A stretch of 5,280 nt of DNA, from the IMG/VR virus record IMGVR_UViG_3300005859_000204, positions 1 through 5,280 of that record. The stretch is one strand, 5' to 3'. Shown in pieces: positions 1 to 5,280 of this stretch (within the stretch, counting starts at the first letter, position 1; every line of letters begins with the position of its first letter). The translations under genes were made by a program, and so were the position numbers. Under the pieces are notes generated by a model. It saw only the letters and a list, made by a program, of their open reading frames with translations. It had not been told where the DNA came from and ran no database searches.

Positions 1-672
1 TGTTTTCTCGTTTAATGAGTCAAGAGTTATCGGCGTATCACGTATAAAATTTTCATGAATTATACAATTTGGTCCGGCATAACGGAAAAGTCTTGGATGG
101 ACTTTCTTTACTTCATCTAACATTTTCCAAGCTAAAGTTCTAATTTCCCATTGAGATCTTGAGCAAAGTCTAAGTGCAAAAAAGTTATAAAGTTCTCTAG
201 CATTCATAGTAACTACAATGTTTGTATTTACGCCGTTTGGTAAGACGTAACGGGCGTCTTCTTCTGGAACTCCAGATTCCAAAAGTTTGAAATAGTAATT
301 GTAAGCATCTCTGTAAGCTTTGTCAACAATTTCTTTAGCTCTTTTTTCTGCTGGTGGAGGTATAATTGGCTGATAATATTCATCTATCGGTTTTGCAAAA
401 CGATAACTGAGTTGAGTATAAGACGCAATTCTATGTCTGACAAGCTGATGAGATGTAATTCTGGAAATCCCCTCAATTGAGAAAGTATACACGCTGTGTT
501 CTAGCACAGACCAATAACCGTGAATTATAGCATCTCTAATCCAAATCTCAATCTCTTCATCTGTCATTGTAGCCTCATGGTAATCCCAACCTTTTCTAGA
601 CCTACTCATTTTTGATGCAATAGCTATAACTCTTTCGCCGTCTTTTGTATAAGATACAAGTTCAACTTTCAT
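1..672 (-). CDS. thyX: Flavin-dependent thymidylate synthase ThyX (3' end beyond window edge)
   Basis: Hand translation from ATG at 672: [29 protein letters not shown]...[42 protein letters not shown]...[45 protein letters not shown]. It carries the ThyX RHR-x7-S-x-R motif plus [19 protein letters not shown] and QWEIR. The frame is open to base 1. Absent from the ORF track. Confidence 0.96.
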
Positions 673-864: not shown

Positions 865-1143
865 TTAGATCACCAAATCTAATTTTTTAGTTGTAATCAT
901 TTTGCCTATTTTTATAGTTACTTCAAATTTGTTTTCTTTTAATGATTTATATATTCGAATTTCAAAATAGAAATGTCTATTTTTTATCTCTAAATATCCG
1001 CTTATCATTATTTTGCCTTTTGAATAGAAAAGTATTTCTGGTTTTTCAGAAAAAACAATTGTTTGATTTAAAATATTTTCTATTTCCTTTTTTCCAATTT
1101 TATTAATTGTATTTTCTATTTCTTGTAAATAACTTGATATCAT
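865..1143 (-). CDS. Small basic alpha/beta hypothetical viral protein (92 aa)
   Basis: ATG ORF with its own upstream TATA+TGTCATA element, tightly coupled to the downstream RHH gene. Predicted N-terminal helices and several C-terminal beta strands. Confidence 0.75.
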   Translation of the reverse strand: MISSYLQEIENTINKIGKKEIENILNQTIVFSEKPEILFYSKGKIMISGYLEIKNRHFYFEIRIYKSLKENKFEVTIKIGKMITTKKLDLVI

Positions 1144-1239: not shown

Positions 1240-1880
1240 TATTTTTTCTCATTTGTTTGGAAATATTCGAAAAGTGAGCCAAAACATCTAGATTTGAATT
1301 CACAATTTTTACATAAATAATTGTTAACTCCAGGAATATTTTTATAGTCTGTCATTTTTAGATATTCTTTAAATTTTTTAATCCAATCTATAGCTTTTTG
1401 TAAATATTGGTCTATTATTTTCTTGTCAATTTGGAATTGTTTAACTTCCTTATTTATTCTATTCAAATATATAATATAGATATTATCAATTTTGAAATTC
1501 TGTTGTTGTAACAGATGATAATAGATAGCAATTTGGTAAAGATGATATTCTTTAATTTGAAAGTAATTAGTTGAGATAGTTTTAATTTCGAGCAAATCAT
1601 TTCCACAAATAAGGTCAGCTCTACCAGAGATTTTTAGACCTTCAATTTCACCTTTGACTTCAACTTCAGCTTGACAGCCTAATTTTTCAACGAAATAATT
1701 CTCAATTCTTTCATGATGAAGTTCGCCAAGATCTAGCACTAGCTCATTTATTCCTTTCTCGAATTCAAATTTCCTAGCAAAATATGACTTTCTAAAACAA
1801 ACTCCGACTTCAGATGGAAATATTGTATCCTCTGGATATTTGACTTTAAAACTTTGCCTAACTAGGTCTTCATAATTCAT
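1239..1880 (-). CDS. cas4: Cas4-like / RecB-family PD-(D/E)xK ssDNA nuclease with Fe-S cysteines (SIRV2 gp19/ORF207-like)
   Basis: N-terminal [10 protein letters not shown] Cys, GELHHE, GRADL, EIK, QIAIY (QxxxY) and C-terminal [17 protein letters not shown] at 1891-1887. Confidence 0.93.
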
Positions 1881-1882
1881 CT

Positions 1883-3190
1883 TTACTCACCAAGATTTGA
1901 GAACCTCATAAAGTTGTATATTTGATTGCAAATTTCTTCATTTTGTCTCTGTCCGATTTGCAAATCAATATCTAGAGCTTGCATCAATATTTGTATATCA
2001 ATTGCTTGTTCTTGTCTTCTAGATTCCAAATTATCACAAACTACATAATTTGTGATACTGTTTATCTTTTGCTGAATTAGGTCAATTAGAGCTTTTAAAA
2101 TGGAGGGATACAGAACTCTAGCGTTTATGATTTTATCATAAGTCTTTTTAATTGCAAGTTGTATAATATGAATTCTATCTAAAATTGCTGGAGTAAAAAT
2201 TTTGTAATTTAATAAATAATCTTCAATATCAAAAGCTGTTAATTTGTTAAGCGTATATGAATATGGATTTCCGGCGTAGATAATCGGGATGCATTTCTGA
2301 ATAGTTGCAGATTTTGATTCAGTTCCAGCACCTCTAGTCCAGACACAATTTTCTATACCGCTGGACAAAGTAGCGTTAATCGATCCCAGCTCTTTCGCAG
2401 AAGTCCCATCTTTCCAGTTCTGGATTTCGTCGAAAATGAGGCCGTTTGACAAAAACACTGAGCCATACATATTATTTCTGGCATCATAAACTAGATTTGC
2501 ATATGTTGGAGCTTCAGTATAATATCGGAAATTAAAAACTTCTTGCAAAATCATAAAAGTCGTAGTTTTTCCAGTTCCGCGGTTAGAAATTTCAATATAG
2601 TTAATTTGACGTTTTGTAATTGGGGATTTAAAGAGTGGGAATAGACGTGGTAGAAATAGAAATATATCTTCAGTTTCCATTTTTGTAACGTCATATCCGA
2701 AAGCTTGAAGTAGAAGAGCGTAGGTCTGATGTTCTTGATTTGCTAAGTCAAGAAGTTCTTTAGCAATTTCATAGTTATTCGGCGGTTCTATTGAATAAAT
2801 ATCCGCGATATACCAGCCATTAACACCTTTTCTAATTTTGACAAACATGTAAGAAGTCAGCAAGTTATAGAAATCTTCAGGATTATCAGCTATGCAGTGA
2901 GGGTCGAATTCGCCAACAAAACCGTTTTGAAATCTAGCTAAAACTGTATCGTTTTTAACTTTAAAATTAGTAATTTTAGAGATAAATTTAACTTCATTGT
3001 TAAAGAGTAGATAAGATTGAAAGTATTGCTGATCAATCCCGCGTTTGTATGCCTTAAGAATCTCAATTTTCTTTCTTTCTTCAATCTGTTTTTCGCCAAT
3101 TATAATGTTGAGAATCCTCTCATTATCTCTCGGATTGTAAAAAAAAGTGTGAGTTTTGACTTTATCCAAGAACTGAGCTGAACTGCTCAT
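1883..3190 (-). CDS. AAA+ ATPase, MCM/BrxL-like (SIRV2 gp18/ORF436-like ssDNA annealing ATPase / putative helicase)
   Basis: Walker [10 protein letters not shown], Walker B LIFDE, sensor-1 YAGN, Arg finger ILDR. 435 aa, located between the SSB and Cas4-like genes as in rudiviruses. Confidence 0.9.
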
Positions 3191-3206
3191 AAAAAAAATG
3201 ATGACT

Positions 3207-3221
3207 TATGACATTTTAAAA
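3207..3221 (-). promoter_or_regulatory. Putative internal promoter for the ATPase gene (TTTTAAAA + TGTCATA)
   Basis: Minus strand TTTTAAAA-TGTCATA overlaps the SSB stop codon. The TATA end is 23 nt from the ATG at 3190, the spacing expected for a leaderless mRNA. Confidence 0.55.
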
Positions 3222-3629
3222 TTCGTCTTCAACATTCTTCTTTGTCTGTTTTTTCTGTTGTTTTTCCTCTTTTTGACTAGACTTTTGACTTTGTTCTTCT
3301 CCTTCAAGCTCTAATTCTTCAACCTGAGGTGCTGAATTACCGCTTCTAGTAAACTTTACGTATTCATTCAGAAGATCAGCATATTTATCTAGGAAATCTG
3401 CAATCAGTCTCAAATCTTTAGCATCATTTGCAGTTATGCCGATCTGTTTCTTATAGTTATTCTGACTGTGCAGAGTCATTGAATATCTTATCGAATTTCC
3501 ATTCGGCACAGCGTTTAACTGAACCACTAATCTTTGCAGACCTTTAATTTTCAAGATTCTAGATACTGGCTTATTTTGTTCTTTAGCTTGTTTACCGAGG
3601 TCATCTATTATTTCCTTCAGGCTTGCCAT
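3216..3629 (-). CDS. Rudiviral single-stranded DNA-binding protein (SIRV2 gp17/ORF131-like)
   Basis: MASLKEIIDDLGKQAKEQNK start resembles recalled rudiviral ORF131 proteins. First gene of the conserved trio. Low-complexity E/Q/K tail ending VEDEF. GGGGG SD at 3639-3635. Confidence 0.85.
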   Translation of the reverse strand: MASLKEIIDDLGKQAKEQNKPVSRILKIKGLQRLVVQLNAVPNGNSIRYSMTLHSQNNYKKQIGITANDAKDLRLIADFLDKYADLLNEYVKFTRSGNSAPQVEELELEGEEQSQKSSQKEEKQQKKQTKKNVEDEF

Positions 3630-3656
3630 GTTTTCCCCCGAATTGAGAATTTGAAA

Positions 3657-3676
3657 TATGACAAATTTAAATATTC
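3657..3676 (-). promoter_or_regulatory. Promoter of the SSB-ATPase-Cas4 operon (TATTTAAA + TGTCATA)
   Basis: Minus strand GAATATTTAAATT-TGTCATA, ending 27 nt before the ATG at 3629. Confidence 0.7.
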
Positions 3677-3709
3677 ACAAATATATAAGTTAAGACATTT
3701 GAGAATTAA

Positions 3710-3727
3710 GAGATAGAAGAAAAAAAT
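3710..3727 (-). terminator. Oligo-T/pyrimidine-rich archaeal terminator after the RHH-like ORF
   Basis: Minus strand shows a T7 run followed by CTTCTATCTC directly after the stop at 3730. Confidence 0.5.
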
Positions 3728-3729
3728 AT

Positions 3730-4002
3730 TTAAATTAGATTTAAGAAGATTGAGCGGATTATTTTTACCGGCTTGAGATTATATTTTTCTGACAATTTTT
3801 GTAACTTCTCGTAATATAAATCATCTATTGTAAAAAATACACGTTCGTCGTAATTATCCATAATTTCGATTGGCTTAAATTCTTTTTCTCCATTTAAGAT
3901 TTTATCTATCTCTTTCTTAATTTCCTCTCGTTTTTGATAAAAAATATCTTTATATTTCCCCGGTATTCTTAATTCTATATACTTATTTCTTTGCCTTTTC
4001 AT
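3730..4002 (-). CDS. Putative DNA-binding protein with C-terminal RHH, possibly a tandem RHH (90 aa from ATG 4002; the track uses TTG 4020)
   Basis: RVFFTIDDLYYEKLQKLSEKYNLKPVKIIRSIF fits the RHH pattern. N-terminal YIELRIP plus helix may be a second unit. GAGG lies upstream of ATG 4002. Confidence 0.6.
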   Translation of the reverse strand: MKRQRNKYIELRIPGKYKDIFYQKREEIKKEIDKILNGEKEFKPIEIMDNYDERVFFTIDDLYYEKLQKLSEKYNLKPVKIIRSIFLNLI

Positions 4003-4025
4003 AATTTTATTTATCCTCAACCTTC

Positions 4026-4072
4026 ATTTAAACATGTCATATACATTTAAATGTCAGATTTTCATTTTGACA
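4026..4072 (+). promoter_or_regulatory. Divergent promoter region of rep with tandem TTTAAA/TGTCA units
   Basis: TTTAAACA-TGTCATA (box 4035-4041), TTTAAA-TGTCAGA (4052-4058) and inverted TGACA (4068-4072). Confidence 0.6.
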
Positions 4073-4073
4073 C

Positions 4074-4421
4074 ATGGATTGTAAAAAAGTTTTTAGCTAT
4101 CACTTTCTTTACAGTTACACTTATTTTGTAACTATTACCACAAATTATCGTTATAATTCCACGATTCCGATCTATAAAAAATTTAGACAATATGTGTATA
4201 ATCATGACTCATCAGCTCATATTTTTTCAGTTAAGGAATATACAACAAAATTCCACGGTCTTCATTATCATCTTCTAGTTTTCACGAATAAAAGACTTGA
4301 TTATTCCAAAGTTCATGAGAAAATGCCTCCGCATTCTGACATTCGAATTGAATTAGTTCCGAAAACAAAAAAAGATATAAAAAAAGTTTTGACTTATATG
4401 TTAAAAAATCAAATCACTTAG
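4074..4421 (+). CDS. rep: Stand-alone HUH endonuclease, rudiviral replication initiator Rep (SIRV1 ORF119 / SIRV2 gp16-like)
   Basis: RCR motif I FVTITT, motif II GLHYHLLVF and motif III YMLK. 115 aa with no helicase domain. Confidence 0.9.
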   Translation: MDCKKVFSYHFLYSYTYFVTITTNYRYNSTIPIYKKFRQYVYNHDSSAHIFSVKEYTTKFHGLHYHLLVFTNKRLDYSKVHEKMPPHSDIRIELVPKTKKDIKKVLTYMLKNQIT

Positions 4422-4707
4422 TTTGTTGTTGTAAATTTTGATATAACCAAATCTTTTTCTGAGCTAATGAATTTACATCTCCAAGAGTGTCCATGTTGAG
4501 AAGAGCATTAATTCCGAGTGTTGTCGTAGTCTTTATACTTTCAACTGCTGTAATAGTAGCTTTTGTCATTTGATCAACAGCTATTTGAAATGCTTGATTT
4601 GCTTGTTTTTGATTGTAAAGATGTACTATTTCGCCAACTACATAACTAGCTACTAGTACTGACATTAATACTAGAAATCCTTCTAAAAATTCTGTGAAGA
4701 TGTTCAT
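4414..4707 (-). CDS. Virus-associated pyramid protein PVAP (SIRV2 P98 / STIV C92 family), virion egress
   Basis: N-terminal transmembrane helix FLEGFLVLMSVLVASYVVGEIVHLYN, then DQM..T..A.ESIK.TT..GINALLNMDTL.DVNSLA, closely matching the recalled SIRV2 P98 sequence. 97 aa. Confidence 0.92.
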   Translation of the reverse strand: MNIFTEFLEGFLVLMSVLVASYVVGEIVHLYNQKQANQAFQIAVDQMTKATITAVESIKTTTTLGINALLNMDTLGDVNSLAQKKIWLYQNLQQQTK

Positions 4708-4742
4708 TTCAATTTCATATTAAACAAATTGCTTAGTAATAA

Positions 4743-4758
4743 ATTTTTTGCAAAAAAT
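4743..4758. repeat. Perfect 16-bp palindrome ATTTTTTGCAAAAAAT between the divergent PVAP and svtR promoters
   Basis: Read directly. Confidence 0.85.
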
Positions 4759-4780
4759 CGAAATATATAAATATGTCATA
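4752..4780 (+). promoter_or_regulatory. svtR promoter (A-rich BRE, TATATAAA, TGTCATA)
   Basis: AAAAAATCGAAA-TATATAAA-TA-TGTCATA, ending 25 nt before the ATG at 4806. Confidence 0.72.
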
Positions 4781-4805
4781 ATTTGTATTTTTGATATGAT
4801 GAAAA

Positions 4806-4967
4806 ATGGAAGCACAAGTTAAGAAAGAAAAAGTAGTTTTCGGTATAAACATGGACAAAGAGCTGAAGAAGAAATTGAAGGCTTATTGTGTAGAAAATGA
4901 CATAACTTTGACCGAGGCAATTGAAACAGCAATAAAAGAATATCTTCAGAAGAGGGGGGCATTATGA
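4806..4967 (+). CDS. svtR: SvtR-like RHH transcriptional repressor (53 aa)
   Basis: MEAQVKKEKVVFGINMDKELKKKLKAYCVENDITLTEAIETAIKEYLQKRGAL, very similar to recalled SIRV1 SvtR/ORF56b (VFGIxMDKxLK..LKxYC.....LT.AIE.AIKEYLQKR). Too short for the ORF track. Confidence 0.9.
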   Translation: MEAQVKKEKVVFGINMDKELKKKLKAYCVENDITLTEAIETAIKEYLQKRGAL

Positions 4968-5104
4968 GAACTGTGACCATAAAATTTGAAGAAGACCTTC
5001 TTAATGAGCTAGATGAATATGCAGAAACTCACGGACTTTATAGGTCAGATGTTGTAAGATTAGCAGTTAGAGAATTTCTAGCAAATAAGAAAAAAAGTTT
5101 ATAA
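4964..5104 (+). CDS. CopG-like RHH protein (46 aa)
   Basis: MRTVTIKFEEDLLNELDEYAETHGLYRSDVVRLAVREFLANKKKSL, a canonical RHH. ATGA overlap with the svtR stop and a G-rich SD at 4952-4959. Confidence 0.87.
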   Translation: MRTVTIKFEEDLLNELDEYAETHGLYRSDVVRLAVREFLANKKKSL

Positions 5105-5130
5105 CTTTAAGTTATTAATTTTTTTTCTTT
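5090..5130. terminator. Probable bidirectional terminator between the convergent RHH and dUTPase genes
   Basis: T run at 5119-5126 on the + strand, A run at 5090-5096 (T run on the - strand), with inverted repeat ATAACTT-T-AAGTTAT (5101-5115) between them. Confidence 0.5.
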
Positions 5131-5280
5131 CAACTTTTATAATTCTCAACAAATTTTGGTAATGTTACGCCATTTTGTTTCTGATATTTTCCGTGATATG
5201 GTCTCTCGACTGGAGTTATTGTTTTAGCGAAAATTAGATGTAGAAATCTTTGTCCACTTTTCAGTCTTACGGGGAATTCG
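5130..5280 (-). CDS. dut: dUTPase / dCTP deaminase family protein, C-terminal 49 aa (start outside window)
   Basis: ...[49 protein letters not shown]. The G.RFLHLIF and PY.GKYQ.Q.GVT motifs are typical of SIRV dUTPase and archaeal Dcd. Confidence 0.88.

What the first reader, a model, noticed from the sequence alone, without database searches (positions are those of the whole stretch)
4074..4967. Pyramid egress gene inserted between rep and svtR
As I recall, svtR and rep are neighbours in SIRV1/2 and PVAP lies far away near the other genome end. Here PVAP overlaps the rep 3' end by 8 bp (convergent, no room for terminators) and is divergent from svtR. This indicates relocation of the egress gene. 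Antisense read-through from rep could dampen this toxic gene until late infection (inference).
Basis: partly seen in the sequence, partly recalled or inferred. Interest (0 to 1): 0.6.

Follow-up and report, generated by a model that had tools for sequence, protein, structure and literature searches.

The report
Pyramid gene between rep and svtR
The egress (pyramid) gene really does sit between the replication-initiator gene and the svtR regulator gene, but this is the normal gene order of the known North American rudiviruses (genus Usarudivirus), so it is not a new event in this fragment.

Summary
The rep and PVAP ORFs overlap by 8 bp, and a 98-bp divergent spacer separates PVAP from svtR.

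The same svtR / PVAP / rep / p96 / SSB / ATPase / Cas4 order occurs in SIRV4-11 and three further Yellowstone isolates, where PVAP is already annotated as "pyramid forming protein". It also occurs in 22 metagenomic contigs.

The 8-bp overlap is a derived 12-nt micro-deletion; in most relatives the two stop codons lie 1 nt apart. "No room for terminators" is wrong for archaea, because each gene has an oligo-T run on its own strand 6-33 nt past its stop, inside the partner's coding end.

Silencing of PVAP by rep read-through is untested, because no RNA data exist. It is also disfavoured, because rep is transcribed 10- to 1000-fold less than other genes in SIRV2.

PVAP occupies a different site in each of four rudivirus genera. 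The direction of the move, and whether it was relocation or re-acquisition, is not resolved by the trees.

Verdict: an ordinary new member of a known kind.

The parts
4074..4421 (+). rep: HUH-type replication initiator, 115 aa, orthologue of SIRV1 ORF119 / SIRV2 gp16
   Evidence: PF21578 at 7.8e-43. PDB 2X3G at 1e-45, with H-Y-H and the aligned Tyr108. 64-67% identical to SIRV1/2 and 74-81% to SIRV4-11 and the three further Yellowstone isolates.
4414..4707 (-). PVAP (P98/C92 family) pyramid-forming egress protein, 97 aa, with an N-terminal transmembrane helix
   Evidence: 62% identical to SIRV2 P98 and 56-60% to STIV C92. 95% identical to metagenomic P0001. Hydropathy peak at residues 7-30.
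4414..4421 (.). 8-bp overlap of the convergent rep and PVAP ORF ends
   Evidence: The junction alignment shows a 12-nt deletion relative to the nearest relative L031. Most relatives have the stops 1 nt apart.
4367..4408 (-). Three oligo-T runs (T7, T7, T6 on the minus strand) just downstream of the PVAP stop, inside the rep C-terminal Lys codons. Predicted PVAP terminator.
   Evidence: The minus-strand background is 4.2 T5+ runs per kb. The A-runs are conserved in all relatives. Function is inferred.
4454..4458 (+). T5 run 33 nt downstream of the rep stop, inside the PVAP 3' codons (the QKK motif). Predicted rep terminator.
   Evidence: conserved as T4-T6. Function is inferred.
4708..4805 (.). 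98-bp divergent control region between PVAP and svtR
   Evidence: Ungapped, and exactly 98 bp in all 15 loci aligned. Mean pairwise identity 78%.
4737..4751 (-). Predicted PVAP promoter: a purine-rich BRE-like stretch plus a TTTATTA TATA box, centred 33 nt upstream of the PVAP ATG
   Evidence: Conserved block AATAATAA. SIRV1-3 PVAP genes have a comparable BRE/TATA at about the same distance. Inferred.
4761..4782 (+). Predicted svtR promoter: a TATA box followed by TGTCATAAT, which contains the rudiviral GTC element
   Evidence: Invariant block. The same block overlaps the rep stop codon in SIRV2. The GTC element downstream of TATA in SIRV promoters is from Kessler 2004, as cited in PMC5569661.
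4806..4967 (+). svtR: ribbon-helix-helix repressor, 53 aa
   Evidence: PF21432 at 6.7e-9. PDB 2KEL at 4e-17.
4964..5104 (+). Second small RHH gene (46 aa). It overlaps the svtR stop by 4 bp, so it is probably co-transcribed.
   Evidence: PF01402. The first T5+ run after svtR comes only 152 nt on, but 15 nt after this gene. Orthologue of SIRV7 ORF13.
4046..4055 (+). Predicted rep promoter: TTTAAA followed by TGTC, centred about 25 nt upstream of the rep ATG, which suggests a leaderless mRNA
   Evidence: Read from the sequence. The rep/p96 spacing is fixed in all relatives. Inferred.
3730..4020 (-). p96: conserved small gene divergent from rep, function unknown
   Evidence: SIRV2 has an unannotated homologue at 9477-9722. 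No Pfam match.

Best explanation
The window is a 5.3-kb fragment of an uncultured rudivirus of the Usarudivirus type. It carries that lineage's standard left-arm layout: ThyX, RHH, p92, Cas4-like nuclease, ATPase, SSB and p96 on the minus strand, then rep (+), PVAP (-), svtR (+) and a second RHH gene (+).

PVAP is a self-contained one-gene unit with its own BRE/TATA promoter. By homology with SIRV2 P98 and STIV C92, it makes the membrane pyramids that open for virion release.

rep, PVAP and svtR-RHH46 are three separate transcription units. rep and PVAP converge tail to tail. Each probably terminates at oligo-T runs that lie within the last codons of the other gene, so the two mRNAs probably overlap by roughly 50-90 nt at their 3' ends.

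The 8-bp ORF overlap is a small lineage-specific deletion with no evident role.

In evolutionary terms, PVAP has been re-sited between rudivirus genera. The most likely history is that rep and svtR were originally adjacent, with the svtR promoter abutting the rep stop as in SIRV2. PVAP would then have entered that junction in the common ancestor of the Usarudivirus-type viruses. That polarity is inferred, not shown.
For: Shown:
- Colinear 76-77% nucleotide match to SIRV4-11 and OM401712-14 over 1276-5279.
- SIRV7 annotation: ORF10 (rep, +), ORF11 'pyramid forming protein' (-), ORF12 'Arc-like repressor' (+).
- The same order in 19 IMG/VR contigs and in L029-L031.
- Stop codons 1 nt apart in most; an 8-bp overlap only in the window, L015, L029 and L030; the junction differs from L031 by a 12-nt deletion.
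- Conserved promoter blocks in an ungapped 98-bp spacer.
- The svtR promoter block sits on the rep stop codon in SIRV2.
- In the window, T5+ runs follow the stops of genes that end predicted transcription units (4-58 nt) but not those of internal genes (152-702 nt).

For the polarity:
- PVAP lies in the right arm just after the second glycosyltransferase in both SIRV2 and SRV.
- rep is adjacent to an svtR-like gene without PVAP in SIRV1/2 and SSRV1, and apparently in SRV.
Against: - No transcript data exist for this virus. Promoters, terminators and the 3' overlap are read from sequence only.
- The genome is about 70% A+T, so single T5 runs are common. 28% of plus-strand positions have one within 45 nt. 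The rep terminator call is therefore weak.
- The A-runs in rep that give the PVAP-strand T-runs also occur in SIRV2 rep, where no gene converges. They were not selected as terminators.
- Polarity is unresolved. In the PVAP tree, the Usa, Ice and STIV groups form a polytomy.
- In the concatenated Rep+SSB+ATPase+Cas4 tree, SIRV2 falls inside the Usa-order group without starred support. Monophyly of that group is neither shown nor rejected (AU p = 0.137).
Confidence: 0.85

Rival explanations
1. One reading: rep transcription reads through into PVAP in antisense and holds this toxic gene down until late infection.
For: The two genes are convergent with abutting or overlapping ends in every genome of the clade. 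The only plus-strand T-run shortly after rep is a modest T5, so some read-through is conceivable.
Against: [quoted passage not shown] Such a weak promoter is a poor silencer; interference in the other direction (PVAP on rep) would be more likely.
- SIRV1-3, SRV and SSRV1 regulate PVAP without any rep convergence.
- The review read here reports stable pyramids, not lysis, when PVAP is expressed in E. coli and yeast (PMC10791045), so the 'toxic' premise is weak.
- No RNA data are available.
Confidence: 0.08
2. This was not an intragenomic relocation. The Usarudivirus ancestor acquired PVAP horizontally, from a turrivirus or another virus in the same springs, and lost or never had the right-arm copy.
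For: - PVAP is shared between unrelated families (Rudiviridae and Turriviridae). The window's protein is about as close to STIV C92 variants (56-60%) as to SIRV1-3 P98 (61-63%).
- In the tree, the STIV-labelled sequences are not monophyletic, and one groups with SSRV1 at 98/96. This shows exchange between families.
- PVAP is missing altogether from ARV1, ARV2, ARV3 and MRV1.
Against: The tree does not place Usa PVAPs with STIV to the exclusion of Ice; the node is a polytomy, and about 95 aligned residues carry little signal. No flanking sequence is shared with STIV.
Confidence: 0.3
3. The rep / PVAP / svtR order is ancestral. The Icelandic viruses moved PVAP out to the right arm, fusing the rep end to the svtR promoter.
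For: - In SIRV2, the last 8 codons of rep are the svtR BRE/TATA/GTC promoter itself, as expected after a deletion fused the two.
- In the ATPase and concatenated trees, SIRV2 nests within the Usa-order diversity (88-90% bootstrap, not starred).
Against: - SRV (Azorudivirus) has PVAP in the right arm after the glycosyltransferase, as SIRV2 does.
- SSRV1 has rep next to an svtR-like gene with PVAP elsewhere.
- The AU test does not reject SIRV2 lying outside the Usa group (p = 0.137).
Confidence: 0.25
4. The functional consequence of the position is co-regulation. PVAP shares a back-to-back control region with the autoregulated svtR promoter, so SvtR binding and spreading also gates PVAP.
For: - The two TATA boxes lie 27 bp apart in a spacer of fixed 98 bp.
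- SvtR represses its own promoter and is thought to spread along DNA (PMC5569661).
- One match to the published SvtR consensus, with 2 mismatches, lies at 4786-4807, across the svtR start.
Against: - That match is at chance level: 0.66 expected, and 98 of 200 shuffles give at least one.
- The fixed spacer length is not special, because the p96/rep spacer is equally fixed. Spacer identity (78%) equals that of the region as a whole.
- In L029, a 273-aa gene is inserted between svtR and PVAP, so the pairing is dispensable.
Confidence: 0.15

Closest known systems
Usarudivirus genomes (SIRV4-11, Bautista et al. 2017; isolates OM401712-14), left-arm module ORF6-ORF13 of SIRV7
   Same: Identical gene order and orientation from the Cas4-like nuclease to the second RHH gene. 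This includes rep (+), PVAP (-) and svtR (+), and the 98-bp PVAP/svtR spacer.
   Different: - Only 76-77% nucleotide identity.
- The window's sublineage has ThyX next to the module.
- It has an 8-bp overlap where SIRV7 has a 1-nt gap.
SIRV2 P98 / STIV C92 (PVAP), the experimentally shown pyramid-forming egress protein
   Same: 56-62% identity, the same length, and an N-terminal transmembrane helix.
   Different: Genomic position. In SIRV2 it lies in the right arm, 22 kb from rep. In STIV it lies between C63 and A61. Pyramid formation by this protein is untested.
SIRV1/SIRV2 rep-svtR pair (ORF119c and ORF56b)
   Same: Orthologous rep (64-67%) and svtR (69%). The same svtR promoter block, a TATA box plus TGTCATAAT.
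   Different: In SIRV1/2 the two genes lie 24 bp apart on one strand, and the svtR promoter overlaps the rep stop. Here PVAP and its promoter lie between them. Relative to the dUTPase/capsid core, the whole replication module is inverted.

Membership tests
PVAP (SIRV2 P98 / STIV C92 pyramid protein) | Significant sequence similarity to P98 and C92 over nearly the full length | tested here: met
   tblastn: SIRV2 62% over residues 8-97, E 7e-27; STIV1 56-60%, E 1e-25 to 3e-22.
PVAP (SIRV2 P98 / STIV C92 pyramid protein) | About 10 kDa with a single N-terminal transmembrane helix | tested here: met
   97 aa. Kyte-Doolittle 19-residue windows above 1.6 only within residues 1-31, peak 2.13.
PVAP (SIRV2 P98 / STIV C92 pyramid protein) | Alpha-helical C-terminal part | not tested
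   No structure prediction was run. The high identity to P98 makes it likely.
PVAP (SIRV2 P98 / STIV C92 pyramid protein) | Self-assembles into seven-sided pyramids in membranes | not testable with these tools
   Needs heterologous expression and electron microscopy.
Rudiviral HUH Rep (SIRV1 ORF119) | Similarity to the solved Rep, with the His-hydrophobic-His motif and the catalytic Tyr | tested here: met
   2X3G at E 1e-45 over residues 2-112. H-Y-H is present and Tyr108 is aligned. PF21578 at 7.8e-43. That Tyr108 is the catalytic residue comes from my memory of Oke et al. 2011.
SvtR (SIRV1 ORF56b RHH repressor) | Similarity to the solved SvtR and to the 56B-type RHH model | tested here: met
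   2KEL at E 4e-17. PF21432 at 36 bits against a cut-off of 27.2.
SvtR (SIRV1 ORF56b RHH repressor) | Binds its own promoter | tested here: inconclusive
   One consensus match with 2 mismatches at 4786-4807, at chance level.
Usarudivirus-type genome organisation | svtR / PVAP / rep / p96 / SSB / ATPase / Cas4 order, with rep and PVAP convergent | tested here: met
Usarudivirus-type genome organisation | Groups with SIRV4-11 in phylogeny to the exclusion of other genera | tested here: inconclusive
   The PVAP clade is supported at 96/91. In the concatenated replication-module tree, SIRV2 is not cleanly outside (AU p = 0.137). Only 17% of a genome is available.

The most novel reading that the evidence does not exclude
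PVAP behaves as a mobile one-gene egress cassette that has been re-sited in each rudivirus genus. In the Usarudivirus lineage it landed against the autoregulated svtR promoter, so virion release came under SvtR control. Convergent PVAP transcription would in turn shut down the weakly expressed rep late in infection. The same spacer then acts as an insertion hot spot, as shown by the PAPS-reductase gene with a duplicated svtR promoter in L029.
Probability: 0.15. Interest if true: 0.4.

Novelty: new member of a known kind. Interest (0 to 1): 0.15.

Why it matters
The finding matters little on its own. The arrangement has been in public Usarudivirus genomes since 2017 and is annotated there.

The comparison does make one modest point explicit. 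The pyramid gene sits at a different place in each of the four rudivirus genera that carry it (Ice-, Usa-, Azo- and Hoswirudivirus) and is absent from others. That fits a self-contained, exchangeable egress module.

It also shows how compact archaeal viruses place the terminators of convergent genes inside each other's coding ends.

Cultured Usarudivirus isolates such as SIRV8 or SIRV9 would allow a direct test of whether convergent transcription or the shared svtR control region affects the timing of lysis.

Tried and rejected
- Public RNA data. The look-up of sequencing runs found only two DNA holders and no RNA run. Transcript overlap could therefore not be examined, and read laying was not used.
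- SvtR operator search with the published consensus gave one match, at chance level.
- The PVAP tree, meant to separate relocation from horizontal acquisition, gave a polytomy among the Usa, Ice and STIV groups.
- The ATPase tree and the concatenated Rep+SSB+ATPase+Cas4 tree, meant to polarise the event, left the position of SIRV2 unresolved (AU p = 0.137).
- Alignment of PVAP upstream regions across genera showed only generic BRE/TATA similarity. There is no evidence that a promoter moved with the gene.
- The fixed 98-bp spacer was tested as a sign of special constraint and rejected. The p96/rep spacer is equally fixed, and spacer identity equals the regional average.
- Pfam gave nothing for PVAP, for p96, or for the small ORFs convergent with rep in SRV and SBRV1.
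- The bacterial promoter/terminator scanner was not used, because it does not cover archaeal signals.

Full report
**What is in the window**

The window is a complete 5280-bp IMG/VR contig, estimated at about 17% of a virus genome. Its ORFs and their family matches are:

| Coordinates | Strand | Gene |
|---|---|---|
| 1-672 | -, cut | ThyX |
| 676-864 | - | RHH protein |
| 865-1143 | - | 92-aa protein |
| 1239-1880 | - | Cas4-like PD-(D/E)XK nuclease |
| 1883-3190 | - | 435-aa ATPase |
| 3216-3629 | - | gp17-type SSB |
| 3730-4020 | - | 96-aa protein (p96) |
| 4074-4421 | + | rep |
| 4414-4707 | - | PVAP |
| 4806-4967 | + | svtR |
| 4964-5104 | + | 46-aa RHH protein |

- rep matches the solved SIRV1 ORF119 Rep (2X3G, E 1e-45) and has the H-Y-H motif and the aligned Tyr108.
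- svtR matches SIRV1 SvtR (2KEL, E 4e-17).
- PVAP has no Pfam model. It is 62% identical to SIRV2 P98 and 56-60% identical to STIV C92. It has a single N-terminal hydrophobic helix.

- In SIRV2, svtR (ORF56b, 8818-8988) and rep (ORF119c, 9013-9372) lie 24 bp apart on the same strand. PVAP (ORF98) is at 31671-31967 of 35450 bp.
- SIRV1 has the same rep/svtR layout and PVAP near its right end.

**The arrangement is the norm in a known genus**

- Megablast finds a colinear 76-77% match over 1276-5279 to SIRV4-11 and three further Yellowstone isolates, all classified as Usarudivirus.
- In SIRV7 the annotation reads ORF10 (rep, +) 6347-6694, ORF11 "pyramid forming protein" (-) 6696-6992, and ORF12 "Arc-like repressor" (+) 7091-7252.
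- tblastn places rep and PVAP side by side and convergent in all eleven of these genomes.
- A scan of IMG/VR gave 19 more contigs with the same svtR / PVAP / rep / p96 / SSB / ATPase / Cas4 order. Three further metagenomic contigs carrying the closest PVAPs (85-95% identity) show it too.
- Bautista et al. [quoted passage not shown]

**The overlap**

- In most relatives the two stop codons are 1 nt apart. The 8-bp overlap occurs only in the window, L015, L029 and L030.
- L031 is the nearest relative (PVAP 95% identical) and has the 1-nt gap. Against it, the window lacks 12 nt at the junction.
- The overlap is therefore a small, derived deletion. It is not a feature of the arrangement.

**Transcription signals (inferred from sequence)**

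- The 98-bp spacer aligns without gaps in 15 loci and has two conserved blocks.
  - Read on the minus strand, one block is a purine-rich stretch plus TTTATTA, 33 nt upstream of the PVAP ATG.
  - The other is a TATA box followed by TGTCATAAT, upstream of svtR. It contains the GTC element reported downstream of the TATA box in most SIRV1/2 promoters (Kessler 2004, as cited in PMC5569661).
  - The same svtR block lies on the rep stop codon in SIRV2.
- rep has TTTAAA followed by TGTC about 25 nt before its ATG.
- For termination, T6, T7 and T7 runs lie 6, 29 and 41 nt past the PVAP stop on its strand, within the Lys-rich last codons of rep. A T5 run lies 33 nt past the rep stop, within the QKK codons of PVAP.
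- Across the window, T5+ runs follow the stops of p96, SSB, Cas4, rep, PVAP and the last RHH gene within 4-58 nt. They are 152-702 nt away after ATPase, p92, RHH62 and svtR. This fits units that end at oligo-T.
- "No room for terminators" therefore does not apply. The likely result is two mRNAs with about 50-90 nt of 3' complementarity.
- Two caveats apply. The DNA is about 70% A+T, so a single T5 run is weak evidence. The A-runs in rep also exist in SIRV2, where nothing converges on rep.

**The antisense idea**

- No RNA run holds this sequence, so the idea could not be tested.
- Indirect evidence goes against it. [quoted passage not shown] Any interference would more plausibly run from PVAP to rep.
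- Viruses with PVAP elsewhere manage egress without this convergence.

**Evolution**

- PVAP has a different site in each genus that has it:
  - the right arm after the second glycosyltransferase in SIRV1-3 and SRV;
  - the centre, before the structural genes, in SSRV1;
  - between rep and svtR in the Usarudivirus type.
- It is absent from ARV1-3 and MRV1.
- Relative to SIRV2, the whole replication module of SIRV7 is also inverted. The tRNA-guanine transglycosylase and permease genes lie in the right arm, where SIRV2 has PVAP.
- Outgroup parsimony favours an ancestral rep-svtR adjacency and insertion of PVAP in the Usa lineage, but the trees do not settle it.
  - Usa PVAPs are monophyletic (96/91) and Ice PVAPs are monophyletic (96/96). 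Their relation to the STIV sequences is a polytomy.
  - In the concatenated Rep+SSB+ATPase+Cas4 tree, SIRV2 is not cleanly outside the Usa-order group (AU p = 0.137).
- Relocation, re-acquisition from a co-resident virus, and the reverse polarity all remain open.

**Verdict**

The "relocation" is real as a difference between genera.
- It is a known, genus-wide layout, not a new event, and the proposed antisense mechanism has no support.
- The fragment is a new, ThyX-bearing relative of the Usarudivirus isolates.

Noticed in passing
L029:8793-10294 (JGI 3300045901 contig of 38101 bp): In this close relative (PVAP 85% identical), a 273-aa PAPS-reductase gene lies between svtR and PVAP. The svtR promoter block (TATA plus TGTCATAA) is present twice, once before the inserted gene and once before svtR. 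The spacer is therefore an insertion site, and the insertion duplicated the promoter.
   Followed up: partly
window 1-672 (-): The ThyX thymidylate synthase is 80-84% identical to those of SRV, ARV1, SMV3, ATSV and STSV1/2. It lies next to the replication module here and in L012, L025 and L029. It is not annotated in SIRV7. It marks a ThyX-bearing sublineage of Usarudivirus-type viruses.
   Followed up: partly
L003 (SIRV2) 9477-9722 (+): The RefSeq annotation shows a 500-bp gap between rep and gp17. This gap encodes an unannotated homologue (55% identity, E 1e-24) of the window's p96 gene (3730-4020).
   Followed up: no
L003 (SIRV2) 9013-9040: The last 8 codons of SIRV2 rep (ending ..KDIKMS) coincide with the svtR BRE/TATA/GTC promoter. 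The rep C-terminus after the YMLK motif varies in length and sequence among relatives.
   Followed up: partly
L005 (SRV) 3993-4151 and L037 (SBRV1) 4056-4211: In two other genera, a 51-52-aa ORF converges on rep and overlaps its 3' end by 12 and 21 bp. The SRV one looks RHH-like in a hand-read alignment with SvtR but has no Pfam match. Tail-to-tail overlap at the rep end is therefore common in rudiviruses.
   Followed up: partly
L034 (MN091909, labelled STIV1) and L006 (SSRV1): The PVAP of a Yellowstone contig labelled STIV1 groups with the PVAP of the Italian rudivirus SSRV1 (98/96), and the STIV-labelled sequences are not monophyletic. This points to exchange of PVAP between virus families.
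   Followed up: no
window 865-1143 (-): The 92-aa protein (orthologue of SIRV2 ORF84a) gives a weak, sub-threshold match to the minimal CRISPR polymerase domain PF18182 (E 0.007, 17 bits against a cut-off of 26.4). This is probably noise.
   Followed up: no
L035 (SIRV7) 27740-29868 versus L003 (SIRV2) 6441-8581: The permease and tRNA-guanine transglycosylase genes lie beside svtR in the SIRV2 left arm. In SIRV7 they lie in the right arm after the second glycosyltransferase, which is the region where SIRV2 carries PVAP. The pattern looks like a reciprocal exchange between the arms.
   Followed up: no
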